Positions 28,554-56,209 of a stretch of DNA of 64,000 bases are shown here, in pieces. The notes beneath the pieces are model-generated. The model saw nothing but the letters and a program-made list of their open reading frames with translations, made no database searches and was not told the DNA's origin. The DNA comes from Lepidodermella squamata. Taxonomy: Eukaryota > Animalia > Gastrotricha. The first letter of the stretch is position 1. Each line of letters opens with the position of its first letter. Location: NCBI GenBank assembly GCA_047495785.1, contig JBLDXI010000017.1, forward strand, positions 992,001-1,056,000, in the 5' to 3' direction. The translations under genes were made by a program, and so were the position numbers.

Positions 28554-30780
28554 AGCCAACAATTTTTTATTGCGGCATGTTATGGACGCGCAGCTTTTAG
28601 CCGAATTCAAGACTCTTGCAAAATCTCTGTTCGATTCAAATGAAAGGCAGTTCCTGCAGAAAACTATAACATCTTACAAAGATGATGAAGATTTTGAGCG
28701 GCTTCTTGAATCACTGAAGACGATAATTGTATCAGTTGATCAATGCCAAATTCTTCCATTCGTTAAACTATTCCTGCTACGAAAGCACCGCAATCTCGCC
28801 AAGCGATTATGCGAATCAGAATTTGTTACAGAAGATGAAAGGATTCATCAACGGGATGGCTCTAAAGTTATCGAACGAATGAACAGTGTACAACAGGAAT
28901 ATTCTCGCGCCTCATCGATCTCCAGTGGAAAGAAAAAGCATCTTCTTTCAGCCGTCATTGTTAGGAAAATGAATGAATCTCTGGGTATTGGCATTAGAGG
29001 CGGAATAGACTTTGGCTGTGGCATATTTGTAAGTGACGTTCAACCCGACTCTCCCGCCGCAAAAGCTGGCCTACAAGTCGGAGATCAAATTATTTTTGTC
29101 AACAACGTCAGTTTCGAATCAATCACAGCTAATGCAGCTGCTAGATTTCTGGCGTCTGCTTTCCCACCTCCTAATGCTAACAATGGTTCTCGGCTCAGAT
29201 TAGTATTCACCAGGACGGGAATGGTTCCCGCACATCGCACTAATCGTGAACGCATGGCTTGGAACGACGTCAGATCGGGAGCAACTGTTTTTGGTGTGTA
29301 TCAGTCTAATGACAACTCCCAGGCTCTTCATTTACCACCTCTGCCAGCTCATGTGGAAGCGACCGGTGGGCTGCAGGAATATGTTGTTAATTTTCACGTG
29401 ACGCTCAGCTTCGCAATAAGAGGCGGACGAGATTTCGGCCTGGGGATTTACATTTCAGCTGTCGGAAGCAAGGATTCTGACGCCGATCAATTGAGGCACG
29501 TTGAGCTCAAACCTGGCGATGAAATTGTTGCGGTAAATGGCAGGGAAATCCAGCCAATGCGCCACTCCCAAGCAGTTGATTTTTTGAGACAGCAGAAGCA
29601 TTTAGCACTGACTGTGAAGCATGTGGGAAAGTATCCGCTATTCAAAGAAATTTCTTCAGAGGTGACATGGATTGTCGCCAATCCAGATCCGAATAATCCG
29701 GCTCCCACTACAGCAACAAATAGCGTTAGGACGGAATTACCGTGGGAGACCGTGGTTACTGTCCGAAGGAATTTGCCCAACGCTAATGGCGACTATTCTA
29801 GTGCAAGAATGTTACCACAAAACAGTCAGCGCAGTCTATCGTTCAGCTTGGCAAAGAGCTCATCGGGAAGTTTGGTTATTGATGCAGCTAACACTCAACA
29901 CCACACCCGACAGCTGCAAAATACAGGCGGATCGCTGCGATCATCTTGGACAGCTTCGGCATCCGGAGGCTCTGGTAACGGCTCCGTTATTTCTCAACCG
30001 GCCAAAGATAGCTTTGTATTTCACTCAACTCGCCGCCGACCAGTTCAACCCGCCAGAACACCGATTTCGACTATTCATTTCGACGAGACGAACAACTCAT
30101 CGCCTTACTGTGACGCCTCTGATTTTCAGTTGCATTTGAAAGAAAGTGCGAGCAATTTGTCTGGTCTGCTGCAAAATCAATCGATGACCAGCTTTGACGC
30201 CGCAAACGCTCGCATTTCTAGACAATGCAGTAGTAATAATAACTACGATCACGTGATTTTCGGCGAAGATCAGCGCCAGCAAACTGGGCTTCCTCCACAT
30301 CCAAGACCGAGTGGTCAGCGTAGAAGTGGGAGCGAATATGAAATCAAGCCAAGTGCAGTTCGCTTTACAGAGGACTCACAAAACATCGAGGCTATAACTT
30401 CAAACGTGAGTTATATGAGAACTTGTCAAGAAATGGGTTTCAACCAGGAATCTGCGCTTCGTCCGCCTTCAGTCGCTGTAAAAGGAAAACATACAACTTT
30501 GATTAAACTACCGAAGCGACCTGATACGAGTTTGGGCCTTGGAGTTTCGGGCGGTGGAGATTCTCCCGATCAGTGCCTTAGAATTGATCACGCCTTACCT
30601 GATAGTATTGCTGGCGAAGCGGTGGCTAATGGTCTTCTCCAGCCTGGGTGCCTTTTATTGGCTGTAGATGGCCAGTCATTGGTCGGAGCTACTCACGAGG
30701 ATGCCGTTAGTTTGATACGGCGATGCTTCCGCGATGCCTCGAAACCGACTTTGAATTTGCTCATATCTACCAATGGCTGA
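28554..30780 (+). CDS. WHRN: Whirlin/PDZD7-like scaffold (harmonin-homology domain + PDZ1 + PDZ2 + C-terminal PDZ); 5' end uncertain
   Basis: HHD-like helix bundle LLAEFKTLAKSLF..QILPFVK; LGIGIRGGIDFGCGIFVS; FAIRGGRDFGLGIYIS; SLGLGVSGG..GATHEDAVSLIRRCF. Acceptor AG at 28552-28553. Confidence 0.8.
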
Positions 30781-31196: not shown

Positions 31197-34100
31197 ATGC
31201 CAAGCGCAGGAGCCGTCGCGCCTCCTGTTATTAGGGTGAGTTTTCAAAATGTTTCAAGCATTCAATTTTTTATTTAAATTTTTTGTAGCCTCTTCGGCCG
31301 CCGATTCCTGGCCGTTCAGCAGTTCACATCGACTCGGCGACTTACTTGGAAATTTACACCGAAACACCCAACTGCAAAATCTACTTCACGACAGATGGAA
31401 CTAAGCCCGATGCGTTTCAAAGCCGATCGGGCAAAGAATCAACGCATCGATACCGCGCGCCCTTCTCGCTAAACCCAGGCCGGCGCCTCCTTAAAACAAT
31501 CGCAGTGTCACGTGACGGCCTGCGACAGAGCGATGTTGTCTCGCGATCATTCCTCGTCGACGACGCAAATGGCCCGAGCGTACCGCCACCATACGACGAA
31601 GAAATAACCGAACTTACAACAACCGGGCCGTCAGATATCGATGACGTAGTCGACTTCCGCGATCCGAATCACAACAAAGTGGTTCGGTATAAGAAAATCA
31701 ATAAGCCAGTCGCGCCGAGTCGTGAAATTGTTGAGGAGATCTATGAAGAGACAATCGCCTCAGATGACGATATGATGACCGATACTTCAAGGACGTTAGT
31801 TTCGGTCCGGCGAACCCCGGGTGGGTTACCTAGGTCTGCCTCAACGACTGAGGTGACGACGGTTTACAAACGACCCATGTCGGCCTCGAATTCAGTCTCG
31901 CATTTCGGACCTCCTCCTACTCCTTCGATTATCGTTGATGGCAATCGGGTTGGGGCAGTTATGCCCCCACCCCCGCCCCCTGTTGGCTACTACCAAACCC
32001 CACCCCCTCCACCGCCTTACCCGGTCATGGGTGCCGCTTTTGCCTGGGGCCCTCAGCCGCCTCAGCCGATCAATCGCCTCGGCTATATGACGGATAAAAT
32101 GATTCAGAGATTGGAGGAATCTCGCGATTTTACGGTGGCTGAAATGCGGCGAACTATTGAAGATTCTCGTCGGGCCGCGTCCCCGCCGCCCGGGCCCCAT
32201 TTTGCGATAATGCCACCGCCGCAAATGGAGCAGCAGCCCCAACCCCAGCCAGCCCAAGTGCCGAATTTCGTGAAGGAACCACCCCTTCACGCTGTCTCGC
32301 CTGGAAACGGGCTGTGGCGAGAACAGGTCGAGCATATCTACGCTCATTTGCTTCAGTACGCTAAGGACCACGTCGGGTTTCGAGTCGCTATTGCCGAGCC
32401 AAGGTTGGGCGACATTTCCGGGCTCGAATTTGAGGAAACTGAGGAAAGCTACGTCTTAAGATTGGAACTATCCCGTTTCGACCAGCCTGTTACTCCGGCT
32501 GTTCGGGAAAAGGCGATAAAGCCAACTCGGGTTACGAAACCTGGACCTAGACCAGCTACGACAGTTGCAGTTCATAAACCACCCCCGAGACGGGAGGAGC
32601 CGCCACCTGAACCACCCAAAGTCGCGAAAAGACCCTCAGTTCAAGAGGAAAAGCCTCTAATCCGAAAACCCCCAGCTGAAGAGAAGAAGGAGAAGGAAAA
32701 GGAGAAAATTGAGTCGTATCTAAAGACTGAAGAAGACCAAAATTGCGAGGGAACGATCAAGCCATTGCCGTTCCACAACCCGGAGAAAGACTGCGAAGTA
32801 TTGCGGAAGGCGATGAAAGGTCTCGGAACGGATGAGAAGGCGATAATTGAGATAATGGGTGCGCGTTCAGCGGCTCAGCGCGTTGAAATTGCGAACAAGT
32901 TCAAATTTATGTACGGCCGAGATTTGGTTTCGGATTTCGAGAGTGAGACGAGTGGTAACTTTCGGGATGCCCTTGTTGCGCTCTGCCTGTCGCCGGCTGA
33001 TTACGATGCGTCTCAAGTTCGGCGAGCGGTTAAAGGAGCTGGCACAGACGAGGATTGCCTCATTGAGATTATTTGTACCAGGACAAATGCGCAAATCGCT
33101 ATGCTGAAAGAAGCTTACAAGAAAGGTAAGTAAAGTCAATGTAGGTTTACATGCTGCTGATAATTTTTTAAATTTCACTTGAAAATAAAAAAAACCCACA
33201 AAAAATGCGCATAATTTTTAATAAGATAACCTTACGTGACCCAATTTTGCGACACATTTGGGAGAGTGGAAAAACTATTGAAATTTCGCGGCCATGAAAT
33301 AAATTAGTCATGGTACATACCTTAGACACGATCAAATTTCGCTTTATTTCGTTAGAAATTTCGTTATAAATTAATCCGAAATAATTAATTAAATTTAAGT
33401 TTTTTGACAATGAATATCATATTATCGGAGACACCATGCATGATATATGGAATAACCTTAAAATTCAAAAACTTGAACATTTCAAAAATTAAAATTGAAG
33501 TGTAATTGTTAATTGAGGGGGTCAATTTTTGGTGGAGTACCTAAGTTAACCATCTGCGAAATTTAATTGTGTCTAAGGTATGTACCATAATTAGTTGAGC
33601 CTTTTTCTTAGGGCGCTAAAGCGTAAGCTGCGCTCTTTAATTAATGAAAATAATTTCATCAACAATTTTCTTTTATTTTGTCTAGCTTTCAACCGGGACA
33701 TGGAGAAAGATGTGATCGATGATACATCGGGCGATTTCAAACGCCTCATGGTTTCGCTCATGCAGGGTAATCGCGACGAATCCAAGACTTACGACATGGC
33801 CATAGTGAAGGAGGACGCTAAGGTTCGTCAACATTTTCGCCACCTTAAAATTCAGCGTTTTCAATTTCAATTTTATTTCAGGCGTTATACGACGCTGGCG
33901 AGGGTAAGAAGTGGGGCACGGAAGAGTCTGTATTCAACAAGATCATCGGCTCACGCTCATATGCGCACTTGCGCGCTGTTTTCGATGCGTACAAGCAGTT
34001 CTCGAAAAAGGATATCGAGGACGCGCTAAAATCGGAAATGAGCGGCGATCTACTCCGCGGCCTGCTCACTGTTGTCCGCTGTATTCGCAACAAACACGCG

Positions 34101-36180
34101 TTTTTCGCCCTCGCCCTGTACAAATCAATGAAGGGCCTCGGCACCGACGACAAAGCCCTCGTCCGCATTTGCATCACCCGATGTGAAATCGATATGGTTC
34201 AAATTAAACAGGAATTCCAGCAGAAATACAACCAGTCACTTGTCGATTTCATTAAAGACGATACCAGTGGCGATTATAGAGATTTAATCTTGAAATTGGT
34301 CAATGGAAATGCCGATGCCTGCGCCGCGTCCCAAGCCGCTGGCCCTACAACAGTTCAACCGGGTGAAATTAAGGAGGAGGCTGTTAAAGAGAATACGGAA
34401 AGGCCAGCTGAGAAAATTGATTACTTCCAAACTGAACCCGAGCTAGACCAAACTCCGACGTTGAAGCCGTTCCCGAATTTCAACGCGAGTCAAGATTGCG
34501 AAGTCTTACGAAAGGCGATGAAGGGTCTAGGCACTGATGAGAAGGCAATAATTAATGTTATGGCCTTCAGGTCAATAACTCAGCGTCTTGAGATTGTGAA
34601 GCAGTTTAGAGTTATGTTTGGCAAAGATTTGGAGAAGGAGTTGATTTCGGAGACGAGTGGAAATTTCAAGGAATGTCTCGTGGCGCTGTGCAAGAGCCCG
34701 GAAGAATATGATTGCCTTGAACTGCGACGTGCTATGAAAGGTAAGAAATTTTTTGACTGCTTTGAAACATTTCGATTTCAGATAAATCAAATTCGATTTT
34801 ATTGCCATAATAAATTTAGGTTTAGATTTTTCCAAAATGAGAGTTTCACGGCGTCCTTAGATCTCCCTTTTCTTATTGTGATACCTAACCGATAGGTCTT
34901 ACTTTTGCGCGTATTTTGCGCTATCGGCGGTTAGTTTGTGAGTTATACTTCGGCCTGCAGAGCCGATATCGATTTCAAGTATCGATTTTACAAATCAGTG
35001 ATTTTTCCGATATTAGAAATATAGGAAGCTAATAAAATTTAAATATTTCTAATTAGGTGATGGTACCTTGTCGTTGAAAAAAATCCTAGGGTCATGGGGA
35101 CATAAGTATTGAGGGAAAACAAAGAAAATTTAGAAATTGCAAAGAATCTGAAAAATTCAGTTTTAGAATGCCCGTATTTAGTGTCGAAGCCTCAATTTTT
35201 CAAATAATATAGAAGAATTTTCCTATAAAATGCCAATTTCTCCGTTGAAATCGCGGATAATAGATGGGAAATCGAAATAATTCAGAAAAAAAATTGCAAA
35301 TTTGAAAATTTGCGGGTAAGTTATGGGACACTGTAGGAGGGCTCTAAAATCGTCGTTTCAGCTTAAAATGAGTTTTTCGAATTTCGCTTTTCCGAATTCA
35401 AAAAATTAGGGCAAGCAAATTTGTCTAAGGTATGCACGAGCTATCTTATTTTTGCTTCAATATTGTCGAATTTTGATTTATTAATTGTTTTTTTTTCCAA
35501 TATTTTCAGGTGCTGGAACTGACGAAGATGCGTTGATAGAAATAATTTGTACCCGTACGAACAAGCAGCTCGACGTGATAAAAGCCAAGTACAAGGAGAT
35601 GTTCAACGGCCGCGATCTCGAGAAAGACGTTGTCGACGATACGAGCGGCGATTTCAAACACGTCCTTGTGTCCCTGCTGCAGGCTGCCCGGCCTGAAACC
35701 CGAAAATACGACATGAACCAGGTGAAAGCCGACGCTCAGGCGCTGCTAGACGCCGGCGCCAAGTGGACAACGGAAAAGGCGAAATTTGTCGAAATTCTAT
35801 GCAGCCGGCCTTATTCGCATCTGCGAGCTGTTTTCGATGAATTCAGCAAACTATCGAAAACGCCCAACATGGAAGATTACCTCAAGAAGGAGATGAGTGG
35901 CGACATTTTGCGCAGTCTCCTCACCGTTGTTAGAGTCATTCGCAATAAGGCCGGCTTTTTCGCGTTAGCCCTGCAAAAGTCGATGAAGGGCCTAGGTACC
36001 GATGACAAAATGCTGACGCGTATTGTGATAAGCCGCTGTGAGATTGATATGGTTCAGATTAAGCAGGAATTCCAGAAGCAATTCAACGCAAGTTTAGCCG
36101 ACTGGATAAAGGACGATACAAGTGGCGACTATCGCCGCACTTTAATGGCCCTTATCGGCGAACCAATGCCTGCTAAATAA
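31197..36180 (+). CDS. DZANK1-type N-terminal domains fused to an eight-repeat (double-core) annexin (exons 31197-31235, 31289-33125, 33686-33822, 33882-34740, 35510-36180; ~1180 aa)
   Basis: N-terminus MPSAGAVAPPVIRPLRPPIPG..HIDSATYLEIYTETPNCKIYFTTDGTKP and VSPGNGLWREQVEHIYAHL..FRVAIAEPRLG (DZANK1-like). Eight annexin repeats follow (MKGLGTDE, VKGAGTDE, KWGTEE, MKGLGTDD, then a second set). Spliced length 3543 nt is in frame. Confidence 0.9.
33305..33592. mobile_element. MITE in annexin intron 2
   Basis: ~38-bp terminal inverted repeats with a perfect 20-bp core ATGGTACATACCTTAGACAC / GTGTCTAAGGTATGTACCAT. A related end (TTGTCTAAGGTATGCACGAGCT) lies at ~35421-35442. Confidence 0.75.
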
Positions 36181-42431: not shown

Positions 42432-44676
42432 TCACCATGTCGTGGATGCATTACTTCGAGACTGAGGTTTTACAGCGTTAGGCGAATCATGCGAGTGATC
42501 AAGATTATCGATAAGCTCTTCGTCACTTGGCACGCAGTGATTAGCGTACAGCGTCGCCAAAGTTGTAGCGACGCCTAACGCCACAAGAAAGATCCAAAAC
42601 AAAACTTGATCAGCAAATTCGGCTAATTCTTCCCACTCTATGAGATTATAAGTCTTGTCAATACGAGATTCGTAAGCTTCAGTGAGCCGTTCCATTGCCA
42701 TCCTCACTTCGTACATAGCTTTGAAAAGTTTGCGATCTTCCGCATCGGCAATACGAGCTTCTATCACTGCCCTAGGCTCTGAATAAGCGGACGATTTCCG
42801 CGTGAAAATAGGGCTGAATGCATTCCTATAAGAAAAAGGCATAAGCTAAATAAAGTTTTAAGCTGGATTATTTCACTTTGTGCAAAAAATTCGCAATTCC
42901 AGGTCAAGCCGGCGCCGATAGTACCGTAACTTGGCGGCTTTTGCCTTCAGTTTCTCATAATCTTCTTCAGCTTCTTTGACAGCTTGAGACACCCATTTTC
43001 CCCGTAAGCATCTGTACGCTCTAACGACAACCATCAACATCCGAGGGACGCGTTTGATAGTTGCGAATTCGTTTCCACATGATATTGTAGTTGGCTGGTA
43101 ATGTATTCCGAGGACTCCGATCGACAGCATCAAAGAGGTTGCACTCATAGCTTCAATTATGAAAAGGAAGACTTTGACCATTGGCATGTAACCAGAGTGT
43201 TCGGGAAGTTTCTTCCCGGAACTGAATAGGAAAACGGTCACTGAGAACAAAACAGCCGTTCCAAGGGAGAATTTTTCACTAGCCGCGGTAGGAAGCTTGA
43301 AAACTAAGCATCAAAGCTGTACAAATTTCGTACAATCAGAGCTACAACAACTAACCAGTCAATGCCATGACTCCGAGGACAAAAATGAAGTAGTGAATGT
43401 TCAACAAGTAATGCAGTGGCTTCCCTAAAAAGGAAACGAAAATATAGGATGATTCAAACTTAATGAATTGGCTTTGAACTTTGAAAGATAATGAAGAAGA
43501 AGATGTCTGTGTATGGCTCCGGGCAGCAGGCGTATTTGATGCTATTTCGACCAAGGTAGACATTTACCAAGTTCCATTTGCCATGAGAAATGAGCCGGCT
43601 AATATCGACGCCTGAGAAAAAGGAAAATCCAAAGACACCAAGACATATTGAGCAACCATGTACCGTCTGAACTATGGTGAAGGTCCATTTCCAATCCGCT
43701 ATGGGTCCAACTGCCAAATTTGAGGTGGCATACCTTAACAACTCACGAGGAGGGAAAATGCGTAAAATTCGTGGAAATGCTTACTTGCTTATCGAAAGGA
43801 AACCAAGTTGGATTAACATGGCAAGTGCTGATTACCTTCCTTGGACTTGCATAGAACACAGTTCCGTCAAAGAAGACCAAAGCCCGAAAAATCGCTTTTC
43901 TCTTCGAATAGTCGGACGCTGTGTTGTAGAGCTCAATGTCGGGAAGAAAAATGTAAGACTGAAAGAATTGAGACATTGATTTCTTGAGGTAATGGGGCTA
44001 TATTTAAATCACCGCTGGAACGTTTAGCATCGTGATCCCGTTGAAGTCCTTTGGATCCCATTTCAGAGCCGCGTCGATCCAACTCTGCGATGAACATTTT
44101 AAGGAAGCATGAGGATCCAGTCGTCGATCAACTCACCTCTTCATACCATACATTCATGCTAAGCTGCTGCAATTTATCATCCTAGCGTGCAACCTATACT
44201 TTCCAGGATGAAATTCGAAAAAATGAAAGACAAACCAGGTCGAAGATATGGTTGATGGATATTGAGAAGTTGACATTCAAAGCCTCGGAGGCTTTCGCAA
44301 CCGGCCGGACCTCGGGTTCGTAATCAATAAACAATGTGCACACCAGCCGCTGCTCATCTGTGACGTTGTTCAGCGGCGGATATCTATGCTCGGCTTTATG
44401 AGTATTGTTAAGAGCAAGGCTGCAGTCTTGCATAAAGCCTTCCCTGAACATATCTGTTGTTGTCTTATCGAGCACATTTGTGAGGGATTTGATTGCTGCG
44501 ATGTGCTGGAAGTATTCGTACTCCAGCTGGCTCAATGCCTCAGTATCGACGTGATCAACAGGCATCGGCCGATGCTTGACGATTCGGTTTCGCGCTCGGG
44601 AATCGAAACCGTGGTCAAAGGAGGCTACTCCCAAGACTTTAGTCATAATAACTAAGCAAAGGGCCAGTACAAACAT
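42432..44676 (-). CDS. Nicotinic-type Cys-loop ligand-gated ion channel alpha subunit, copy A (multi-exon)
   Basis: Signal peptide, VRPV, PDIELYNTA, Cys-loop CHVNPTWFPFDKQVC, FGSWTHSG, YACCPEPY, M1-M3, MA helix and M4 (EWEELAEFADQVLFW). Confidence 0.92.
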
Positions 44677-44800
44677 TGCTTTATTACAAATCGTTTTTTA
44701 AACACTGATTATTGCAAAAAGAGCGCACTAAGTCTATCGATCACGCGCAATTAACGAACAATTAATCCTTGAGGGATTAGAAAACGTAATTAGCACTGAA

Positions 44801-47133
44801 TCAGGGTGCAACTAGAGGTTGTAGTTGTTCGATCGAGTCGTGTCCATGGTCATCACTGTTAAGCACGGCGCTGTCTTCCGGCGTTGCTGTGTTTGATAGA
44901 ACGAAGGCCGTAATTGTTGCGGTAGCGATAGCGCACAGGAAAATCCAAAACAGAATTTTGTCCATGAATTCGGCTAGTTCGTGCCACTCAATGATATTCC
45001 GCGTCCTAACCAAGCCATTCTCGTAAGAATCAGCCAGACGTTCGATGGCTTCGTTAATTTCACCGAATCTACGAAGGAGTCGGAACTGCTGGATGTCAAC
45101 AGGTACCCATCGATTGGCAGATTGCCGAGATTTTATACCTCTGAGATTAGACGGCTTAATGTTAGTGACTATTTTCACCTCAGAAGTGGTCCGTCTGATG
45201 AAGGGAGGGCTGTCTACAGGTCTAAATTTCGGCGGAATTAGCCATGTATTTCAGAAAATATTTTTTACCTTGAAAATGACAATTGCCTCATTTCGAAGTC
45301 GATTTCTCTTTGATAACCGCGAAGTTTTCTGGCGAACTCAGCTTTTCGATCAAACTCTGCTAGCTTTTGCTTGACCAACTCACTAACCCAGTTGCCTTGA
45401 TACCGGCGATAGAATTGAACCAACGGCATCAGGTAGCTAGGTACTCGTTTCAAAGTGACAACACTTTTGTAAATTTTGGCGTTTTGAAAATGAATAGCAT
45501 GCACCCATGTTGTTATCATAAGGGAGATCGAGCTCATTGCCATTATCATAAATAAGTAGGCTTTGATGATAGGAATGTAGTCCGAATTTTCCGGAAGTTT
45601 CTCTCCCGATGATAGCATGAAAACCTAAACATTTCAGGTGAAATCAGGCATGACAGTGTCTGTTGATATTCTTACCGAAACTGAGAACAAAACCGCGGAT
45701 CCAAGACCACATTTTTCGCCGGCATCAATCGGCAGCTGATAAACTGAAAATAGTTTCAGGTTTCAAGTGTTTGGCATGAAGCGGCATTTCGTTCTCAAAC
45801 CTGATACAACCATCAGTCCGAGAGTGAAAGTGAAGAAATATACGTTGAGAATGTAATAGAGCGGCTTACCTGATTAAACGAGAACTCAAAAATTGAAGTA
45901 AATATAATCAAAACTTACGTCTCATCACGATGTAGTAGGTAATATCAATGTAAGGCTCATCGCAACACGAATAGGTCCGCGAATTTCTCCTTTGCAACAC
46001 TTTCAATAGATTCCATTTACCGTGAGGAATCAGCCTGCTCAAGTCAACACCTGAAACAGGATCCGTAGTAGTATTAAGGGAAAAGGATGAGTGGCACCTA
46101 CCGTCTCTGCCGTGTTGCATGTCTATTTGAAATCCGCTGTAAGACCAGCTGCCGAATTTCAGTCGACAAACCTATTGATCAATTTTGTTATCGCAATATC
46201 GCAATTCATGGAAACTACTTGAGTGTCGAAAGGAAACCAAGTCGGCACCACGTGACAAGTGCTGACGGTTTTCGTCGGATTGCCGAAGAACACCGAGCCG
46301 TCGTGGGATATCATCGCTCGAAATATAGCTTTTCTCCTTGAGTATTCAGCTGCGGTATTGTATAACTCAATATCCGGCACGAATATGTAGGACTGTAAAA
46401 TCAAAAATCAAACTAAATTCAGAATTCAGAGATAAGGTGGTAAGTTTACCGAGGGGAGATTGATGGATTTAATTCCGGAATAGTTGGCTGGGTCCCATTG
46501 CAGGAACTCGTCTTTCCAAGACTAGTTGGTTAGAATTGAGGCAATTAAACATACAATCACAATTTCTCTTACCGCTTCGTACCAAACATTCAGTGTCAAC
46601 TGTTGGAGGCGATCATCCTAATACATGTTACTAATTATTACAACAAAAAATACACATAACTTTTGGCTTACGAGATCGAAAATTTGATTGATTGATATAG
46701 TGAAATTCACCACCAACGGTTTTGTAACATCTCGAACAGGACGCACTAGAGCGGAGTAGTTGTGCATAAGAGCGCAGGTGAGACGCTGCTCATCGGGGAT
46801 GTCATTAATCGGAGGCACTCGACCGTAACCAGTGAAGTTATCAGCGAAAATCGGCGCGCAATCGACGATGAAGCCCTCTCGGTACAAATCGTTGGCGGTC
46901 AAGCATTGGATATTCGACAGCTGCGCCATAGCCGTTTGATGATCAACGTGAAATATGCTCATCCCGTCAGGGCCCATTTCATCAGTTTCATTTCCGCCGA
47001 CTTGATGGACGTGGACGGTCGATACCTTGCGATGAAACGCGCGGTGTGCCCCACGACCGGCAGGCGCTCTATAACCTGAAGATTTTCCAAAAGCTACCAA
47101 AATCACCACGAGAAATCGTAATAAGCGTCGCAT
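44801..47133 (-). CDS. Nicotinic-type Cys-loop channel alpha subunit, copy B
   Basis: PDIELYNTA, CHVVPTWFPFDTQVC, FGSWSYSG, YSCCDEPY, GEKCGLGSAVLFS, EWHELAEFMDKILFW. Confidence 0.92.
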
Positions 47134-47637
47134 TTTACATTTTACAAAAATGTCATTTATTCGTCACAAGAGTTAGCAACTTTGCTTTCGGTAATATGAC
47201 ACCACGCGTAATAATTGCAAATGTTCACTGATTATTGCGCGTTTATGGCGTCCGTACCATCGATGATCGTTTCATCACTCATTTTAATCAAATTATTAAT
47301 AGCATCGTAATTTATATCAAATCGATACTTTTGTGGTCGGGCCATGTGCCTAATATGAAGTTCTTTCCGCCGCTAGAGGAGGTGCGTTCTTAATTTTAAT
47401 TTTCGTTTTAGTGATGAAAATTCGTCGGTTCACTGCACCGGGAGATAAAGCACTAACATCGTCCATACAGCTGACGCCTCGGATACTGGTCTGGGTTAAA
47501 ATTTTATTTATCTCGACACCGGATGTTTGGGTTGTTATCAATTTTTGACCTATATCTCTTATCAAACCAAGGCCTTTTGATATAGGCGCTTTTCTCAGTT
47601 CACAACATTGATAGACTTGTAAGTTGCTGACCCTGGG

Positions 47638-49215
47638 ATGAAGACCTTTATTCAGTTGACTCTTAGTATTTTGTGTGCGATCGGGCTTCTTGTTTCGCCA
47701 CTGGAAGCTAGGCCGTCACGCAAAATTTATGCTGCCGAACCGCAAACTGACGACACCCGCTCTAGCCGGAAGACCGTGTCAGACCCGGGGCAGCCTTTGT
47801 TTTTAACACCTTACATCCAAGCGGGTCAGATTCAACAGGCCCAGCAGCTGGCGATGGTCCCTACACTTCTTGCGGGAGTTACGTCATACTCTGGCTACAT
47901 AACTGTCGACAACACTACAGGGGCTAACATGTTCTTCTGGGCTGTAAACGCTGACCAGGATCCCGAACATTCCCCGGTGGTGGTCTGGTTGCAGGGTGGC
48001 CCAGGAGCGTCGTCGATGTACGGCCTGTTTGTCGAGAACGGTCCATTTAAGTTGGACGCCAATTACAACATGTCACGCCGAACTACTTCTTGGACCAGTC
48101 TAGTCAACATGATCTACATTGACAACCCGGTTGGAACCGGATACTCGTTCGTCAACCAGGACAGCGGTTATTGCACGAACGAAGAACAAGTCGCTGACCA
48201 TTTGTATAAATTCATCGTTCAGTACTTTCAGCTGTTCCCCAAGCTCGCTCAAAATCCATTTTTCGTATCCGGGGAATCATACGGTGGCAAGTATGTACCT
48301 GCCTTTGGCGCGAAATTGGCTCAAATGGAGGAGTATTACAAGATGAGTGGCAAAGCTAACCCAGTTGCTAACCTGAGAGGCATTCTAGTTGGTAATGGCT
48401 TCACCGATCCTGAAACTGTAAGCTGAAAACTTACAAATAGGAGTAAACTTATTTTGTTCTTACAGATGCTGCCAATGGGAGGTGACCATCTTTACGCCCT
48501 TGGGTTGTTAACCGAGTCTCAACGCGAATACTACAACAGCCAGTACGATCTGGCGGTTACCTACATTAAGGATGGGCTCTTCAAACTCGCCTTCGATATC
48601 GATGATTACATGATCAATGCCGACTTTTACCCGTATCCCAGCTACTTCTTGAACGTCAGTGGCTGCTCGGATTATTTCAACTTCATGCTTTGCTTGGTAG
48701 GTTAATCGATGCGATTGAGAAGTTGATGAGCTAAAAATGCATTTTCACAGCAAGCGCCGCCTGAATTCAACTACTACGTCAACTACATTCAGCAAGACAA
48801 CATTCGCCGCGCGATTCACGTCGGAAACCGCCCATACGGTGCCACTGATTCAAAGGTTGAAATGATGCTGATAAACGATGTAATGGATACGAGCAAATAC
48901 CAAGTTGAGTACCTACTAACCCAAACTAAAGTTCCCGTCCTTTATTACAGCGGCAATCTCGATTTGATCGTCCCTACTGTAGCAACAGACAATTTTCTGC
49001 GATCATTGGACTGGCCTTATCGTAAAGATTGGCTGCATACCAAGCGGACAATCTGGACGGATGACAACGGTGAAGCAGTAGCATACTCGATTACAGTTGA
49101 TAAGTTGACCTACGTCGTGATTCGTAACGCTGGTCACATGGTTCCTTATGATCAACCTGAGATCGCTCTAGGCATGGTCAAGACCTTCCTTAATGAAGCT
49201 CTTCTGAAGAAGTAA
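47638..49215 (+). CDS. CPVL: Serine carboxypeptidase S10, CPVL-like (exons 47638-48417, 48466-48696, 48751-49215; ~491 aa)
   Basis: Signal peptide, GQPLFLTPYI, WLQGGPGASS, IDNPVGTGYS; catalytic GESYGG, GNLD and NAGHMVPYDQP. Confidence 0.93.
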
Positions 49216-49305
49216 GCTCCAGAAACAATTAATTTAAGACTAATTCCTCTGAAAGAAATTTGATTCCATTGAATGTGAATAAACGTTTGCTTTTACTTCA
49301 GAAAT

Positions 49306-51501
49306 TCATGAATGCTCGTAGCCAAGACTGTCTTCTATAGCGTGAATCATTTCGTCACCGTTAGGATTGTGTCGACTTGCATATCCGAACACAAAAGCAA
49401 TGGCGAAGATGAAAAGGGCAAGAAATAGCCAAAACAAAACAGCATCGACAAATTCTGCTAGTTCGTGCCATTCTAATAGCCTTAGTTCACGGGCCAATTT
49501 GATTTCATACGAATCGGCCAAGCTTTCGATAGCAACGTTAATTTCGTTCAGCCGATTTATCATAGTGAAGTCGTGGTAGTCTATTCGCTCGGCATCAGCT
49601 TCTGTATCACAAGTGTCGAGGTCAGATTTCATTGTCGGGAACGTAGCTGATAACTTGAGCTCAGAAAGGATAAATTTTGGTGGCTTTGACCTATTAAAAA
49701 TTGAAATAATGACAAGGATTAGGTGTCAATTTTGAAACTAGCCTTTTGAACGATGGGTGTCGCATTTCGAAATCAATGCATCTTTGATAGGCCCTCAATT
49801 GTTTAATAAGCTTCTTCCTTGCCTCATATTTTATCCGTCTCTTTTTCATACTATCAGCAACCCACTTCCCACGCCATTTGCGATAGAGCTTGAGAACTCC
49901 CATTAGAACTTCTGGAACTTTGCGGATAGTAGGGGTCTCATTTTGCTTTGCTGGGGCGCAGTGTTGGAAATGTATAGCGTGAATTCCAATCGTAAGCATT
50001 AGAGACATCGCAGTCATTCCCATGATAATGAAAAGGTAAACGTTGATGATCGGAATGTAATCGGAAGACTCGGGCATTTTCTCGGTTATGGACAGCATGA
50101 ACACCTTGGGTACAGACAGGTCATTAAATGAGCTGAATTTCTTAGTAATTTTAATATCAACTCACCGAGACTGAGAACAAAACAGCAGTACCTAAAGCGC
50201 ACTTCTCCCCTGAATCAATAGGAAGCTGGTAAACTGAAAGTGTCATAATGGACAACATAACAGTGAAGAAATAAACGTTCAGCAAGTAATACAGCGGTTT
50301 TCCTAAAAATTAAGCTCGTTCGCATGAAGTCTGAGCACTGATAACGTTTAACTCACTTTTTAGAACGAAATAGTAAGAAATGTCAATGTAAGGCTCTGGG
50401 CAACAAGTATAAATAACTGAATGCCGCTTTTGAACCACATCTAAAACATCCCACTTCCCGTTGACGATCAGCTGGCTCAAATCAACACCTTGATTCGAAA
50501 ATATATCGAGTTATAAAAAGAGCTCAACTTGAATTTCAGATATACTACCTCCTCTACTTGGTCGAAGGTCGATTTCCAAACCACTGTGGGTCCAGCTTCC
50601 GAATTTGAGATGGCAGACCTGGGTGTCGAATGGGAACCAAGTGGGGTTGATATGGCACGTGCTGATTAATTTAGCCGGATTCCCGTAGAAGACCACGCCC
50701 TCATAAGAAATCATTGCTCTGAATTGCGTCCTCCGTTTCGAGTAGTCAGCGGCCGTGTTGTAGAGCTCAATGTCAGGCGTGAAAATGTAGTACTGAAGCA
50801 GCACCCATTATGCAATTTACATGATTGAGCTACGAAGTAAATATACCGAGGGTAAATTGATTGATTTGAGGCCGCCAAATTTCGGAGGATCCCATTGCAA
50901 ACCAGGATCAAACCATGTCTGTGGGTTAACAATGTTGTCATCATGGCAAGATTGTCAAAATGAGCACTAACTTGTTCGTACCAAACGTTCATCATTAGCT
51001 GCTGATTTCGGTCATCCTAAAAAATCAAATTATTCCTTGTCGTTTAGTCGGTGTGTTGACTGTTACCAAATCAAAAAGCTGCGTCACAGTAAGGCTGAAA
51101 TTTACTATTAAGGTGTCGTCCCTATGAATAACCGGTCTGGCAGACGCACTGTAATTGTGAAGTAAGAAGCAGGTCAGCCTTTGTTCGTCGGTCGGTGGGA
51201 AATCATTGTAATTCTGGCGTTGAAATAACTTGGTGCAGTTTTGCCGAAATCCTTCACGGTACAAATCTGACGTAGTAGACGCAAGGACTTTCGGAGGAAG
51301 CTTGACATAGCTGGAATAGTAATCCACGTAATAGTGCTCGAGGCCAGTAGTCTGCTCACTCTCGGCGTGCTCCAGAACTTTAGCGCGAAATATCTCATCC
51401 TGAGTTAAGGGTATACCTTCATCGAGTATACCAAATCCAAAAATTGAATGAACCAATAGTGACCCAAAATATGCTGCTTGAACTAAATGTGAGGTCTTCA
51501 T
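49306..51501 (-). CDS. Nicotinic-type Cys-loop channel alpha subunit, copy C (alternative upstream ATG at 51558)
   Basis: PDIELYNTA, CHINPTWFPFDTQVCHLKFGSWTHSG, YTCCPEPY, SGEKCALGTAVLFS, EWHELAEFVDAVLFW. Confidence 0.92.
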
Positions 51502-51668
51502 AGCCAAAAATGCTGTGGTCCGTGGTAGCACGCCATAGGGACTACGCGCACCTGTCATAACCTGTCATGACATTTCGGATGTGGTTTATTAATGTGAGAA
51601 ATATTCATTACTTTCGCACTAATAAACAAAACATCGATTCGTGGCAGCCTATGCTAATCTACGCTCAA

Positions 51669-53798
51669 TTAATGCTTATGCTCAAAGTCCTCAATTATTT
51701 CCTGTCCGCTGGGTGTTGTAAGACCGGCCACGCCAAATGCGAGCGTAAACGAGCCCACGGTAAGATTGACGAAAAACCAAAATAGGATCGAATCAAGGTA
51801 GTGAGCCATCTCCTGCCAATCAAGCAGCAGAAATGCGCGGTCTATCTGCCTCTCATAACGCTCGGTTAGCCGCTCTATCGTGTAGTAAATCTCTTGCGTA
51901 GCCTTGATGATGTCCGCTTGAAATTTGTCCAATATTGGGATTCTCCTTTTGTGGCGCAGTCTCTCCAGCGTTCCTAACTCGTTCATTTCAGCTACGATCG
52001 ACGTATGGCGGCCTCTCAATCTCCTTCGCATCGATTCAGTATACCTGAAAGCAAAGGTTTAAGTGATTCACCAGGAAATTCTGTTACTAGTACCTGACGT
52101 TGATGAATTTGTTGAAGTCCCACGTAAAGCATTTTTGGTATTGTCGTAGTGCAGCCACAAACTGTCGTTTTTCGTTGTATTTTGCAACGATTTCCTCCGC
52201 GTAGTACCTTTGAGACTTCTTCAGACTCGCCCGGCGTTTCTGAACAAAGCGCCTAACCCATGGAGGAGCTGGTTTGACTTGTGGATAATCTTTGCCCCCA
52301 GGCAGATAAACCAGACTTCGGTGGTAGATGCTGCTGATAACCACGCTGACCATTAGAGAGAAAGCGCTCATCGTCGTGACTATGAAGAGATAGATGTTTA
52401 TAATTGGAACGTAGTCCGATGAGTGGGGCAGTTTTTCAGCTATCGAAAGCATGAAGACTGATGATGAAAAAAGAGTGGCAGTTCCCATGTTGAATCTCTC
52501 TCCAGCACTGTGAGGAAGCTTGTAGCTAGCTACTGTCATCAAAGCTAACATGACTGTAAAGAAGAAAATGCTGTAAAAGTAGTATTTCGCTTTCCCTAAG
52601 GAAAAATACTGTCACAAAGCAAGTAAACGAGTGAAAATCAACTCACGTTTCAAAACGAGGTAGTAAGAGATGTCGACGTAGCTGAAAAATGAATGCTGAA
52701 TTTATTCCTCGCCTTAATACTTACTGCAACTCACGGATCAGGGCAACATGTGTAAATTATGGAGTGACGTTTGCACGCCACGTCGATCAAGTCCCATTTC
52801 CCATTGGATTCCAGCCGGCTGAGATCGACTCCTAAATCACAGTTTCTGAAATGCAATTGCTGAGATCTTTCATAGTTAATCACCTCCACGATCCGGCTGA
52901 AGATCTATTTCATGCCCGCTGTAAGTCCAGCTACCAAACTTCAGGTGACATACCTTCGTCGAAAATTCTATGCTGGTCTTCTTTTTCTTGCAAGGAACAA
53001 CCTACCTGCACATCGAATGGGAACCAAGTCGGATTCAAATGGCAGGTGCTCAGGGTTTTAACAGGAATTCCGTAGAAAACCCGGCCGTTGTTGAATACCA
53101 TTGCTCGGAAGCGAACTTTCTTCTTGGAGTACTCCGCGGCAGTGTTGTAGAGCTCGATGTCGGGTATGAATATGTAGGCCTGTTGTCAGAAATTAACTTA
53201 TAGGAAACATTATTCAAACAAGCTACCGCTGGCATATTGATGCTGGTTAGGTTTCCAAAATCTTCGGGATCCCAAATTAGCGATATGTCCATCCAGGTTT
53301 GTACGAGCCATATATTCAGTTTTAAAGACTGGTGTTGGTCACTCTGCACGTGTAACATATACTTAATTTAGATAAAAACTTAGATATTAGAGCATGACTT
53401 ACCAAATCGAATATTTTATTAATCGCGACGGTGAAATTTACTGTAAGCAGATCCTCCTTATTTTTCACCGGTCTTACTGCGGGGTCATAGTTTTCCAGCA
53501 AATGACAGGTAAGCTTTTGCTCATCCGTTAGGCTACCCGTGAAATTCTCGGCTTTGAGCGCCTCGCAATCTTGTTGGAAACCTTTTCGTTGCACATCCGC
53601 TGTGTAATAGCCCAGAATTGGGGACAATATATGGTCAGCTACGTAGTGGTTAACCCCTTCCTTCCGACTAGAGCTAATTACATCTTGTCGTTCCAACAGT
53701 GATTCTTCATTGAGCGTTTCTACTTCAGCGGCCAGAATACGGTAAAATGTAAGCAGTATTAAAAAAGTAAGTTGTTTCAGAAGCGCGTTTGGTACCAT
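51669..53798 (-). CDS. Nicotinic-type Cys-loop channel alpha subunit, copy D
   Basis: PDIELYNTA, CHLNPTWFPFDVQVC, FGSWTYSG, YTCCPDPY (split by an intron), AGERFNMGTATLFS, DWQEMAHYLDSILFW. Confidence 0.92.
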
Positions 53799-53965
53799 TC
53801 GATATAAAGAATGGCAAAATCATCTCGAATTACTGGACATCATAAAAAAGAATTAGGACTTTTGGTACAAACTCTTGCAAAAAAACCGCTACATGATTTT
53901 ATTTCTTAATAATGCAAATGAGGTTATAGCAACAAAAAAGGAAGTGTCAGATCACAAATTTGGCT

Positions 53966-56209
53966 CTATCCATTATGACGGCGCTTTTCATCATACTGGG
54001 ACAGGAGCTCGGCCGCAGAAGGTGCACTGATGCTGGCTATACCAAAAACGAAAGTGAACGCAATGATGGTTATAATCAGATAGCACCAAAATAGTAGTAC
54101 ATCTATGAGCTCGGCTACTTCATGCCATTCTATAAGATGCAAATCTCGATCGACTTGCAGCTCGTAACGGTCAGCGAGTCGTGAAATCGCGCTGTGAATC
54201 TCAATAATTGCGTCCAGTTTGAAAGTTACAGGATCAGCTGCTGGCTCCTTCGGGTTGCTCACTAGGCTCAATAAAGACTTCTTTCTATCAGCATAATTTG
54301 AAAGTCTCCTGAGCCTTGACACTGCTGTAGAATAAGCGAAATCGTTGTCCAACTGTCTCTTCAGCTTCTCCTTGTTGCTGTTGGGAAAAGAACATTCATC
54401 AGAGTCCCAAAATGCTGAAAATGTTAATCCTTACCATTTCTTTAAAGCACTTATCTCGTCCACAACACTATTTTGGTATTCACGTAATACTACGATATGG
54501 CGTTTCTTTCTATGATACCGGTCGATCATATTCTGGACCGATGAGGTGACGAATTTGCCTTGCAAGCGCCGGCGAAGATCGATCAGGAACCGGAGGGATT
54601 TTGGTACCGCCTTTACCTGCGGGTATTTTTTGCCCGGCACACTGTGCAGATTTTGGTAGTGAACGGCGTTGATGCCTATGGTCAGCATCAGACTGGAGGA
54701 AGTCATTCCCATCACCAGAAACAAATAGAGGTTGATCACTGGTACGTAATCTGACGATTCGGGCAACTTTTCCGAAACAGATAGCATGAAAACAGTAATT
54801 GAGAACAAAATCGCCGCACCGAGGGCGCATTTCTCCTTAGAGTAGATTGGTAGCTGGAAGACTGCGATAGTCACGGTTACTAGCAACCCAGTGAAGAAAT
54901 ATAGACCCAGTACGTAATACATCGCTCGCCCTTCCAAAATTATCATAAATAAGCACTTTATGAAACAATCCAACTAACTTCTTAGGACGAGGTAGTAAGA
55001 AATATCGATATAAGGCTCCACGCAGCATGTGTATATCACCGAGTGTCTTCTCTGAATAACGTCAACTAAATCCCATTTCCCGTTTGACACAAGACGGCTC
55101 AAATCCACGTCTAAAGATGCCAGAGAATATTACTAGTAAATCTTGTCTGAACTATTACCTCGTGTGGGATGCAGGTCAATCTCCAGTCCGCTGTGGGTCC
55201 AGCTACCAAATTTCAGATGGCACACCTATCATCGAGTTCAAACCATTTGGAAAGTGCAATCAGGTGTTCATACCTGGGTATCGAAAGGAAACCTGAAATA
55301 TATTCATGATGAATTTTTAACATAATTTTCAATAAGGTCTAATTACCAAGTAGGATCGATCGCGCAGGTGCTCACTATTTTTGCTGGATTGCCGTAAAAG
55401 ACCCTGCCGTCGCTAGAAACCATTGCCCTAAACTGGGTTTTCTTCTTAGTATAATCAGCAGCCGTGTTGTACAGCTCGACGTCGGGTATGAATATATATG
55501 CCTGAATAAAATGATTATTTCAACTTTTAGTAAATATAAGAGAGACCAACGCACAGCAGGCAAATTTAGCATTTTTATATTTCCATACTTCTTCGGCTCC
55601 CATTTCAAATTCTCGTCGATCCAGCTCTGAGAAAGATAAGGAGCTATAATGTAGCCAGCAGAATGCTTCCGCGACATACTTGTTCAAACCAAACCTGTTA
55701 CGAGAATATTTGCATCATTATACAAATTTAAAAGTCAAAATTATCTCTTACATTCATTATCAGCACTTGATTATGGTCATCCTATAGGGAAAACATAACA
55801 AATAAACTTAAACTTGAAAATTTAATAAAAATCAAACCAGATCGAACAGTTGATTTATGGCGAAGCTGAAGTTGACGACCATAAGATCGCGCCTAAGCTT
55901 TACTGGGCGAGCATTTGTGCTGTAGTTGTGCAGCAAAATGCAAGTCAACATTTGCTCATCAGTGATAACACGAACAGAAACGTTCCGAGAATCGTGAAAC
56001 ATGTAACTTCCTGACAGTATGTCCGTGCAATTCTGCTTGAAACCCTCGCGGTAAAGATCGGTTGTCGTGAATGCGTGGACCCGCTGCATGGTCTGAACAT
56101 CGATATCAGTTTTAAAATAATGGTTGATCTCTTCATCTCGCCCCGTTGAAGTTACGGAAAGTAAAAAAGTTGCAAAAAGTACGAATGCCGAACCGATTTC
56201 TCGTTTCAT
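53966..56209 (-). CDS. Nicotinic-type Cys-loop channel alpha subunit, copy E (contains micro-exons)
   Basis: PDVELYNTA, CAIDPTW/FPFDTQ/VC, FGSWTHSG, YTCCVEPY, SKEKCALGAAILFS, EWHEVAELIDVLLFW. Confidence 0.92.

What the first reader, a model, noticed from the sequence alone, without database searches (positions are those of the whole stretch)
31197..36180. DZANK1-annexin chimera: ciliary DZANK1 modules fused to a double (8-repeat) annexin core
Seen: two separate blocks closely resemble DZANK1 as recalled, namely the N-terminal Fn3-associated domain (PLRPPIPG..HID..IYFTTDGTKP) and the SPGxGxW..QxxHIxAHL..FR..IAEPRxG block. The zinc-ribbon CxxC region is replaced by a Pro-rich linker, and the ankyrin repeats are replaced by eight annexin repeats. 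The second DZANK1 block and the first annexin repeats lie in one continuous exon, so the fusion is not a gene-merging artefact. Established: DZANK1 is a ciliary, dynein-linked transport protein; annexins bind membranes in a Ca2+-dependent way; octads are rare (e.g. ANXA6). Inference: a Ca2+-regulated membrane adaptor for cilia.
Basis: partly seen in the sequence, partly recalled or inferred. Interest (0 to 1): 0.8.

Follow-up and report, generated by a model that had tools for sequence, protein, structure and literature searches.

The report
DZANK1-headed double annexin gene
This invertebrate gene really does join the front modules of the dynein-linked transport protein DZANK1 to eight calcium- and membrane-binding annexin repeats; the same unstudied join sits in predicted proteins of molluscs, rotifers, a ribbon worm and a priapulid, and its function is untested.

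Summary
Window 31197-36180 (+) is one five-exon gene of about 1,180 codons. It encodes a DZANK1-type N-terminal Ig-like domain (Pfam Fn3_assoc), a Cys-free Pro-rich linker, a second DZANK1-type block (SPGNGLW...FRVAIAEPRLG), and eight annexin repeats in two four-repeat cores. BLASTP against a canonical DZANK1 (Mya arenaria) gives E 1e-23 for the first block and 7e-13 for the second. The second block and annexin repeat 1 lie in one open exon, and one cDNA contig spans that junction. Two introns are spliced in cDNA as predicted, and a relative's almost intron-less copy confirms the other three exon joins. Thirty of 32 listed coding variants are synonymous.

The genome also keeps a canonical DZANK1 with zinc ribbons and ankyrin repeats, so this gene is a paralogue, not a replacement.

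The architecture is not lineage-specific. Collinear proteins exist as predictions, often labelled "annexin A6-like", in molluscs, bdelloid and seisonid rotifers, Lineus and Priapulus. I found no paper describing them.

At least six of eight Ca2+ loops are canonical, so Ca2+-dependent membrane binding is likely. A ciliary or dynein role is only inferred. The NINL-binding zinc ribbons are absent, and an LC8-like GTQ[IV]N motif conserved in other phyla is degenerate here.

The parts
31197..31235 (+). Exon 1: ATG plus 13 codons (MPSAGAVAPPVIR), the DZANK1-type extreme N-terminus
   Evidence: Sequence. The relative encodes MPSAGAVAPPVIRPLRQPIPG without an intron. The donor is GTGAGT at 31236.
31289..31564 (+). 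DZANK1 block 1: Ig-like beta-sandwich (Fn3_assoc / CHB_HEX_C_1), E2 residues 1-92
   Evidence: Pfam E 2.8e-9 and 1.4e-8. 44% identity to Mya DZANK1 (E 1e-23). AlphaFold pLDDT about 95 over residues 1-100. Only weak Ig/Fn3-like Foldseek hits.
31565..32287 (+). Linker 1: Cys-free, Pro-rich and predicted disordered, lying where DZANK1 has its double zinc ribbons
   Evidence: 0 Cys, 18% Pro and no CxxC. pLDDT below 50 over most of it.
31976..32011 (+). PPVGYYQTPPPP: degenerate remnant at the position of the NP.NY[SA]GTQ[IV]N.WG motif that is conserved in orthologues of other phyla
   Evidence: Motif scan and alignment.
32069..32173 (+). Conserved helical motif (INRLGYMTDKMIQRLEE...), shared with the fusion proteins of other phyla
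   Evidence: Alignment consensus GY[LM]TE.MI. Predicted helices at 269-277 and 283-297, pLDDT 62-74.
32288..32479 (+). DZANK1 block 2 (VSPGNGLWREQVEHIYAHLLQYAKDHVGFRVAIAEPRLG...): two helices plus a beta-hairpin
   Evidence: 40% identity to Mya DZANK1 471-535 (E 7e-13). Also matches the genome's own DZANK1. pLDDT 84-87.
32480..32770 (+). Linker 2 (P/K/E-rich), ending in the junction motif YLKTEED..EGTIKP that precedes annexin core 1
   Evidence: A like motif (YFQTEPE..TPTLKP) precedes core 2.
32771..34310 (+). Annexin core 1 (repeats 1-4), across exons 2-4. Introns lie at 33126-33685 and 33823-33881.
   Evidence: Pfam Annexin. Ca2+ loops. cDNA joints 33123>33684 and 33820>33880 with GT..AG, seen in X1 only.
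34311..34475 (+). Linker between the two annexin cores
34476..36180 (+). Annexin core 2 (repeats 5-8) with the stop codon at 36178-36180. An intron lies at 34741-35509.
   Evidence: Pfam Annexin. The relative's intron-less ORF L009:9912-11561 confirms the E4|E5 join. No cDNA depth at 35262-35455.

Best explanation
SHOWN. This is a real, transcribed, single-copy gene under purifying selection, encoding a protein of about 1,180 aa. Its head is built from two modules that otherwise occur together only in DZANK1. These are the N-terminal Ig-like Fn3_assoc domain, including DZANK1's very N-terminus, and the 'SPGxGxW...FR..I.EP.xG' module of two helices plus a beta-hairpin. Disordered Pro-rich linkers join the modules. 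The tail is two annexin four-repeat cores. The gene is a paralogue of the canonical DZANK1 that the same genome keeps. It belongs to an old, unstudied family with the same collinear architecture in molluscs, rotifers, a nemertean and a priapulid.

INFERRED, tail. The annexin octad binds acidic phospholipid membranes when Ca2+ rises, because six repeats keep the canonical GxGT-38/39-D/E site. Like other two-core annexins, it could hold one or two membranes.

INFERRED, head. The DZANK1 head docks the protein to whatever these two modules bind in DZANK1, which is still unknown. DZANK1 itself works with cytoplasmic dynein-1, DYNLL1/2 (LC8) and NINL in vesicle transport to the cilium base. The protein would therefore be a Ca2+-switched link between a membrane and the DZANK1-associated transport or centrosomal machinery, bypassing NINL.

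For this particular species, direct LC8 binding through the family's GTQ[IV]N motif is probably lost.
For: - Architecture: Pfam, BLASTP against DZANK1, and an own-genome search that finds only this gene and the canonical DZANK1.
- Transcription and splicing: cDNA run X1 carries SMART-oligo ends. It skips introns 2 and 3 at the predicted GT..AG sites and has no depth in introns 2 and 4. One contig spans block 2 to annexin repeat 1.
- Gene model: the relative's nearly intron-less copy sits beside the same PDZ gene.
- Constraint: 30 of 32 listed coding variants are synonymous.
- Family: collinear proteins carry Fn3_assoc plus 8 annexin repeats in Adineta, Rotaria, Didymodactylos, Seison, Mytilus, Magallana, Tegillarca, Patella, Littorina and others. 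Priapulus has 11 repeats and a Lineus isoform has 4. E2 aligns end to end with the mollusc proteins.
- Ca2+ sites: exact 38-residue spacing in R1, R2, R4, R5 and R8, 39 in R6, and KWGT in R3.
- DZANK1 biology: PMC4617706.
Against: - No experiment or localisation exists for any member of the family.
- The only mapped DZANK1 interaction surface, the zinc ribbons that bind NINL, is absent.
- What the retained modules bind is unknown, and block 2 has no structural match.
- The LC8-like motif is degenerate in this species. The LC8 complex prediction for the mussel motif gave no verdict.
- No RFX X-box above background lies upstream.
- R7 has KWTT instead of KWGT.
- The exon 1-2 and exon 4-5 joins are supported by the relative, not by an RNA joint.
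Confidence: 0.6

Rival explanations
1. It is a general-purpose annexin for membrane repair, trafficking or cortex organisation. The DZANK1-derived head is an inherited partner-binding N-terminus with no specific link to cilia or dynein.
For: - Annexin N-termini generally set partner specificity (established knowledge).
- The NINL-binding zinc ribbons are missing.
- The LC8-like motif is degenerate here.
- No X-box lies upstream.
- The oyster orthologue cluster has 119 members, many of them Logan contigs of transcript length (3.5-4.5 kb), which hints at broad expression.
Against: - Both DZANK1 modules are kept at 40-45% identity across phyla, together with a strictly conserved GTQ[IV]N motif in most lineages. 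This argues that a DZANK1-like interaction is maintained.
- This genome carries other cilia- or microtubule-type heads fused to annexins, according to the scan's unchecked notes.
Confidence: 0.3
2. It is an artefact: two neighbouring genes, a DZANK1 fragment and an annexin, read as one, or an assembly chimera.
For: None beyond the general risk with unannotated eukaryotic DNA. A prokaryote-style gene caller did split the relative's copy into two ORFs at an intron.
Against: - One open 612-codon exon carries both kinds of module.
- A cDNA contig bridges the two.
- DNA run X2 covers the whole locus.
- The same join occurs in at least four phyla.
Confidence: 0.02
3. The likeness to DZANK1 is only the generic Fn3_assoc/CHB_HEX_C fold, which is common in bacterial glycosidases, and not descent from DZANK1.
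For: The Pfam families that hit are generic, and the Foldseek hits are bacterial Ig-like modules.
Against: - Block 2 matches DZANK1 specifically (E 7e-13).
- The extreme N-terminus (M.sAGa..P.I.PLR) is shared with DZANK1.
- In the whole genome, the head matches only the canonical DZANK1 locus.
Confidence: 0.03

Closest known systems
[quoted passage not shown]
   Same: It shares the N-terminal Fn3_assoc Ig-like domain, including the first residues, and the SPGxGxW...FR..I.EP.xG block, in the same order.
   Different: It has no double zinc ribbon (PF12773) and no ankyrin repeats. Pro-rich linkers and eight annexin repeats stand in their place. A canonical DZANK1 exists separately in the same genome (G000 C7).
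Vertebrate annexin A6 (the classical eight-repeat annexin)
   Same: Both have two four-repeat annexin cores joined by a linker, with canonical type II Ca2+ loops. Automatic annotation calls the mollusc orthologues 'annexin A6-like'.
   Different: ANXA6 has a short N-terminal tail, whereas this protein has a head of about 490 aa with folded modules. In both trees the two ANXA6 halves form their own clade (99/96 and 99/95), apart from the cores of this family, so the octads are not shown to be orthologous.
Predicted, unstudied 'annexin A6-like' / 'Annexin' / 'uncharacterized' proteins. Examples: Mytilus trossulus (P0017), Magallana (XP_052694826.1, A0A8W8NM74), Tegillarca, Patella, Littorina, Adineta vaga I4U23_028696, Rotaria, Seison nebaliae SNEBB_008824, Priapulus LOC106807208 and Lineus LOC135498269.
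   Same: They are collinear: N-domain, GY[LM]TE.MI helix, SPG block, junction motif and annexin octad. E2 aligns end to end at 32-35% identity and E4 at 51-57% to the mollusc proteins.
   Different: The window protein and its near relative lack the otherwise conserved NP.NY[SA]GTQ[IV]N.WG motif and have longer Pro-rich linkers. Priapulus has 11 repeats and the Lineus isoform has 4.
Other heads fused to annexin cores: NME8-like-annexin and DCX-PLAT-trefoil-annexin genes in this same genome (scan notes s1-407574 and s1-373939), and the Acropora Hmw/CFAP97-annexin protein (P0033)
   Same: A cilia- or microtubule-associated N-terminal module is joined to one or more annexin cores.
   Different: The heads are unrelated. 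I did not test those genes here, except for Pfam on P0033.

Membership tests
Annexin superfamily | At least four ~70-aa annexin repeats (PF00191) | tested here: met
   Pfam E 1e-38 to 4e-68 per exon. There are eight repeats.
Annexin superfamily | Type II Ca2+ site: GxGT, then 38 residues, then D/E | tested here: met
   Canonical in R1, R2, R4, R5 and R8. R6 has 39-residue spacing. R3 has KWGT, as in annexin repeat 3. R7 has KWTT and is doubtful.
DZANK1 | N-terminal Fn3_assoc domain with the DZANK1-type N-terminus | tested here: met
DZANK1 | Conserved SPGxGxW...FR..I.EP.xG block | tested here: met
   E 7e-13 against Mya DZANK1. It also matches the genome's own DZANK1.
DZANK1 | Double zinc ribbon (PF12773; the NINL-binding ZNF_RBZ region) | tested here: not met
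   No Pfam hit. There are 0 Cys between the two blocks. The genome's own canonical DZANK1 has it.
DZANK1 | C-terminal ankyrin repeats | tested here: not met
   No Ank hit. Annexin repeats stand there instead.
DZANK1 | Association with DYNLL1/2 and NINL | not testable with these tools
   The complex prediction with LC8 gave no verdict. Biochemistry is needed.
Annexin A6 (vertebrate orthogroup) | Orthology of the two cores to the ANXA6 N- and C-halves | tested here: not met
   The ANXA6 halves are sister to each other (99/96* and 99/95*) and separate from this family's cores. Caveat: no ANXA5 or ANXA10 sequences were in the trees.
DZANK1-head/annexin family of protostomes (unnamed) | Collinear head (N-domain, GY[LM]TE.MI helix, SPG block, junction motif) followed by annexin cores | tested here: met
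DZANK1-head/annexin family of protostomes (unnamed) | Conserved NP.NY[SA]GTQ[IV]N.WG motif between the N-domain and the helix | tested here: not met
   It is present in 18 of the 19 named and unnamed orthologues scanned (not in the unnamed P0027). It is replaced by PPVGYYQTPPPP here and by PYHQPPPP in the relative.

The most novel reading that the evidence does not exclude
The family is a Ca2+-switched cargo adaptor. The DZANK1 head, with the GTQ[IV]N motif as an LC8 site in most phyla, plugs into the dynein/centrosomal transport system, and the annexin octad grabs vesicle or periciliary membrane directly. Read as a 'Rosetta stone' fusion, it would predict that vertebrate DZANK1's two unexplained modules form an autonomous unit that works together with a membrane-binding, annexin-like partner in transport to the cilium base.
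Probability: 0.15. Interest if true: 0.75.

Novelty: new variant of a known kind. Interest (0 to 1): 0.5.

Why it matters
DZANK1 is a poorly understood ciliopathy-pathway protein. Only its zinc ribbons have a mapped partner, NINL. This family shows that the N-terminal Ig-like domain and the SPG block have been kept together, without zinc ribbons or ankyrin repeats, for as long as spiralians and priapulids have been separate. They are always joined to a Ca2+- and membrane-binding tail. That marks the two modules as an autonomous functional unit. It also gives a concrete, testable guess at their context, namely membranes and Ca2+.

For annexin biology, it is a conserved case of a large folded head on a two-core annexin, hidden in databases under the misleading label 'annexin A6-like'.

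Within this genome, it joins several other cilia- or microtubule-type heads fused to annexins, which suggests a wider design principle.

Tried and rejected
1. LC8 binding. A complex prediction of the genome's own LC8 (two copies) with the mussel GTQIN peptide (P0017 192-232) scored 0.08 and gave no verdict. This is no evidence either way.
2. RFX X-box upstream of the ATG, here and in the relative. The best match was 9 of 14, the same as random 416-nt windows. This gives no support for ciliary regulation.
3. Foldseek of the head model against the PDB. Only weak Ig/Fn3-like hits for the N-domain (best E 5e-3) and nothing for block 2.
4. Trees of half-cores (140 columns) and of whole cores (303 columns), to ask whether the octad arose once. 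Core 1 and core 2 split before the mollusc radiation, before the bdelloid radiation, and before the window organism and its relative diverged. Deep nodes are unresolved, and cores tend to group by lineage (bdelloids 93/85). A single origin and repeated duplication or homogenisation both remain open.
5. The acoel 12-repeat annexin (Symsagittifera, P0150). It has no DZANK1 head by Pfam or hhalign, so it is not a member.
6. Literature. Searches on DZANK1 + annexin, annexin + Fn3_assoc, annexin gene family / eight annexin / invertebrate, and 'annexin A6-like' + cilia found nothing on this architecture.
7. Naming the organism. Run names are coded and no tool gave a taxon. By best hits the protein is nearest to lophotrochozoan sequences.
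8. Not done. I also left out the large exhaustive protein search.
Full report
**Observation and gene model**

On the + strand an ATG at 31197 opens a 13-codon exon (MPSAGAVAPPVIR) with a GTGAGT donor. After a 53-nt intron, exon 2 (31289-33125) runs for 612 codons without a stop. Exons 3 (33686-33822), 4 (33882-34740) and 5 (35510-36180) follow, all with GT..AG introns and matching phases.

Pfam scans were run exon by exon. They give Fn3_assoc (E 2.8e-9) and CHB_HEX_C_1 at E2 residues 15-88. Annexin hits fall in all four large exons and add up to eight repeats, with repeats 2 and 6 split by introns.

**Likeness to DZANK1**

A word-index protein search with the non-annexin part of exon 2 returned a canonical DZANK1 of the clam Mya arenaria (P0003: Fn3_assoc + double zinc ribbon + ankyrin). 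BLASTP of exon 2 against it gives two separate, collinear hits:
- Residues 1-104 match DZANK1 13-116 at 44% identity (E 1e-23).
- Residues 329-395 match DZANK1 471-535 at 40% identity (E 7e-13).

Between the two blocks, the window protein has 228 residues with no cysteine and 18% proline, where DZANK1 has its zinc ribbons. After block 2, it has annexin repeats where DZANK1 has ankyrin repeats.

A six-frame search of the window's own genome with the clam DZANK1 finds a canonical DZANK1 as one intron-less ORF on another contig (G000 C7:3893033-3895663). Pfam shows Fn3_assoc, DZR and Ank in it. Searching the genome with the window's head finds only the window gene and that locus. So the gene is a single-copy paralogue of DZANK1, not its replacement.

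**Is it one gene?**

Block 2 and annexin repeat 1 lie in one open exon. Two public runs hold the locus:
- X2 covers it evenly and looks like DNA.
- X1 carries SMART cDNA-oligo ends. It has no depth in introns 2 and 4. It has contigs that skip 33126-33685 and 33823-33881 at the predicted GT..AG sites. One 765-nt contig (32081-32845) runs from before block 2 into annexin repeat 1.

A relative's copy lies on a metagenome scaffold (L009, 61% identical) next to the same PDZ gene. It has only one intron. Its two ORFs read straight through my E1|E2, E3|E4 and E4|E5 joins.

Of the 32 listed allele or strain differences in the coding exons, 30 are synonymous, and the other two are L>F and V>I. The gene is real, expressed and constrained.

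**Distribution**

A profile search built from the first hits returned proteins with Fn3_assoc plus eight annexin repeats from these taxa:
- Bdelloid rotifers: Adineta, Rotaria, Didymodactylos.
- A seisonid rotifer: Seison.
- Many molluscs: Mytilus, Magallana, Saccostrea, Pinctada, Tegillarca, Potamilus, Patella, Littorina, Babylonia.
- Priapulus, with 11 repeats.

A Lineus isoform has the same head with four repeats. The sources call these proteins 'annexin A6-like', 'Annexin' or 'uncharacterized'.

Exon 2 aligns end to end with the mollusc proteins at 32-35% identity, and exon 4 at 51-57%. The alignment shows a shared order: N-domain, a GY[LM]TE.MI helix, the SPG block, a junction motif (..TE....EGT..P), then the annexin cores. 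One ancient fusion is the simplest reading.

I did not look exhaustively outside these groups. An acoel 12-repeat annexin lacks the head. Four literature searches found no description of this architecture.

**The annexin tail**

The GxGT-38-D/E type II Ca2+ site is intact with exact spacing in repeats 1, 2, 4, 5 and 8. Repeat 6 has 39-residue spacing. Repeat 3 has the usual KWGT form. Repeat 7 has KWTT. Ca2+-dependent binding to acidic membranes is therefore the expected activity. This is an inference from established annexin biochemistry.

In trees of half-cores and of whole cores, the two halves of vertebrate ANXA6 form their own clade (99/96 and 99/95). So the label 'A6-like' reflects architecture, not shown orthology. 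Whether the octad of this family arose once is unresolved.

**The head**

AlphaFold, run with a 26-row alignment, gives the following:
- A confident beta-sandwich for residues 1-100 (pLDDT about 95).
- Two helices plus a beta-hairpin for block 2 (pLDDT 84-87).
- Moderate-confidence helices at 269-297.
- Disorder elsewhere.

Foldseek finds only weak Ig/Fn3-like matches and nothing for block 2.

In zebrafish and human cells, DZANK1 binds NINL through its zinc-finger region (residues 244-317). It co-purifies only with the dynein light chains DYNLL1/2, and it is needed for vesicle transport to photoreceptor outer segments (PMC4617706). The fusion lacks the NINL-binding region.

All but one of the orthologues scanned from other phyla carry a near-invariant NP.NY[SA]GTQ[IV]N.WG motif. 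It resembles the LC8 anchor, in which Q at position 0 is the most conserved residue and the phage-display optimum is VSRGTQTE (PMC6607443). Canonical DZANK1s have ATQTVG or VQTVQT shortly before the SPG block. This is a lead only: a complex prediction gave no verdict. In the window protein and its relative, the motif is replaced by PPVGYYQTPPPP and PYHQPPPP. If the motif is an LC8 site, this lineage has probably lost it.

**Mechanism**

Shown: the architecture, its transcription, the selective constraint, its conservation across phyla, and the intact Ca2+ loops.

Inferred: the tail binds membranes on a Ca2+ rise. The head docks to the still-unknown partner of DZANK1's two retained modules. Together they would make a Ca2+-switched membrane link to the DZANK1/dynein transport context without NINL.

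I put about 0.95 on the architecture and family assignment. I put about 0.35 on the dynein or cilium-base link and about 0.3 on a general, non-ciliary annexin role. No X-box supports ciliary regulation.

**Context**

Unchecked notes of this scan report other cilia- or microtubule-type heads fused to annexins in this genome: an NME8-like head and DCX-PLAT-trefoil heads. A coral protein joins an Hmw/CFAP97 domain to annexin cores. I did not test those notes.

**Limits**

- Everything was done exon by exon, by reference.
- The exhaustive protein search was left out as costly and not decisive.

Noticed in passing
window 33516-33709 and 34874-35067: High-copy repeats lie inside introns 2 and 4 of the gene. 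Summed word depth is about 1,950 in both runs for the first, and about 62,000 in the DNA run for the second, with many divergent flanks.
   Followed up: no
window 28570-30780 (+); L009 5859-7727: A multi-PDZ protein gene lies directly upstream of the fusion gene, both here and in the relative's scaffold. This is conserved synteny.
   Followed up: partly
G000 C7:3893033-3895663 (L001:415-3105:-): The canonical DZANK1 of this genome is a single intron-less ORF of about 900 codons (Fn3_assoc + DZR + Ank). It has two overlapping LC8-like anchors (VQTVQT) before its SPGRGYW block.
   Followed up: partly
P0033 (Acropora muricata, 1615 aa): An Hmw/CFAP97 domain (PF13879, E 2e-13) is followed by about ten annexin repeats. 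This is another cilia-type head on annexin cores, in a cnidarian.
   Followed up: partly
P0009 (Priapulus caudatus, 1288 aa): The same DZANK1 head is followed by 11 annexin repeats, that is, a third and partial core.
   Followed up: no
window 31288-31406 (run X1): A cDNA contig begins at the exon-2 acceptor with an inverted-duplicate artefact and SMART-oligo ends. So it does not show whether exon 1 or a spliced leader precedes exon 2 in RNA.
   Followed up: no
window 42432-56209: According to the scan's notes, a tandem array of nicotinic-receptor-type subunits lies downstream. I did not examine it.
   Followed up: no
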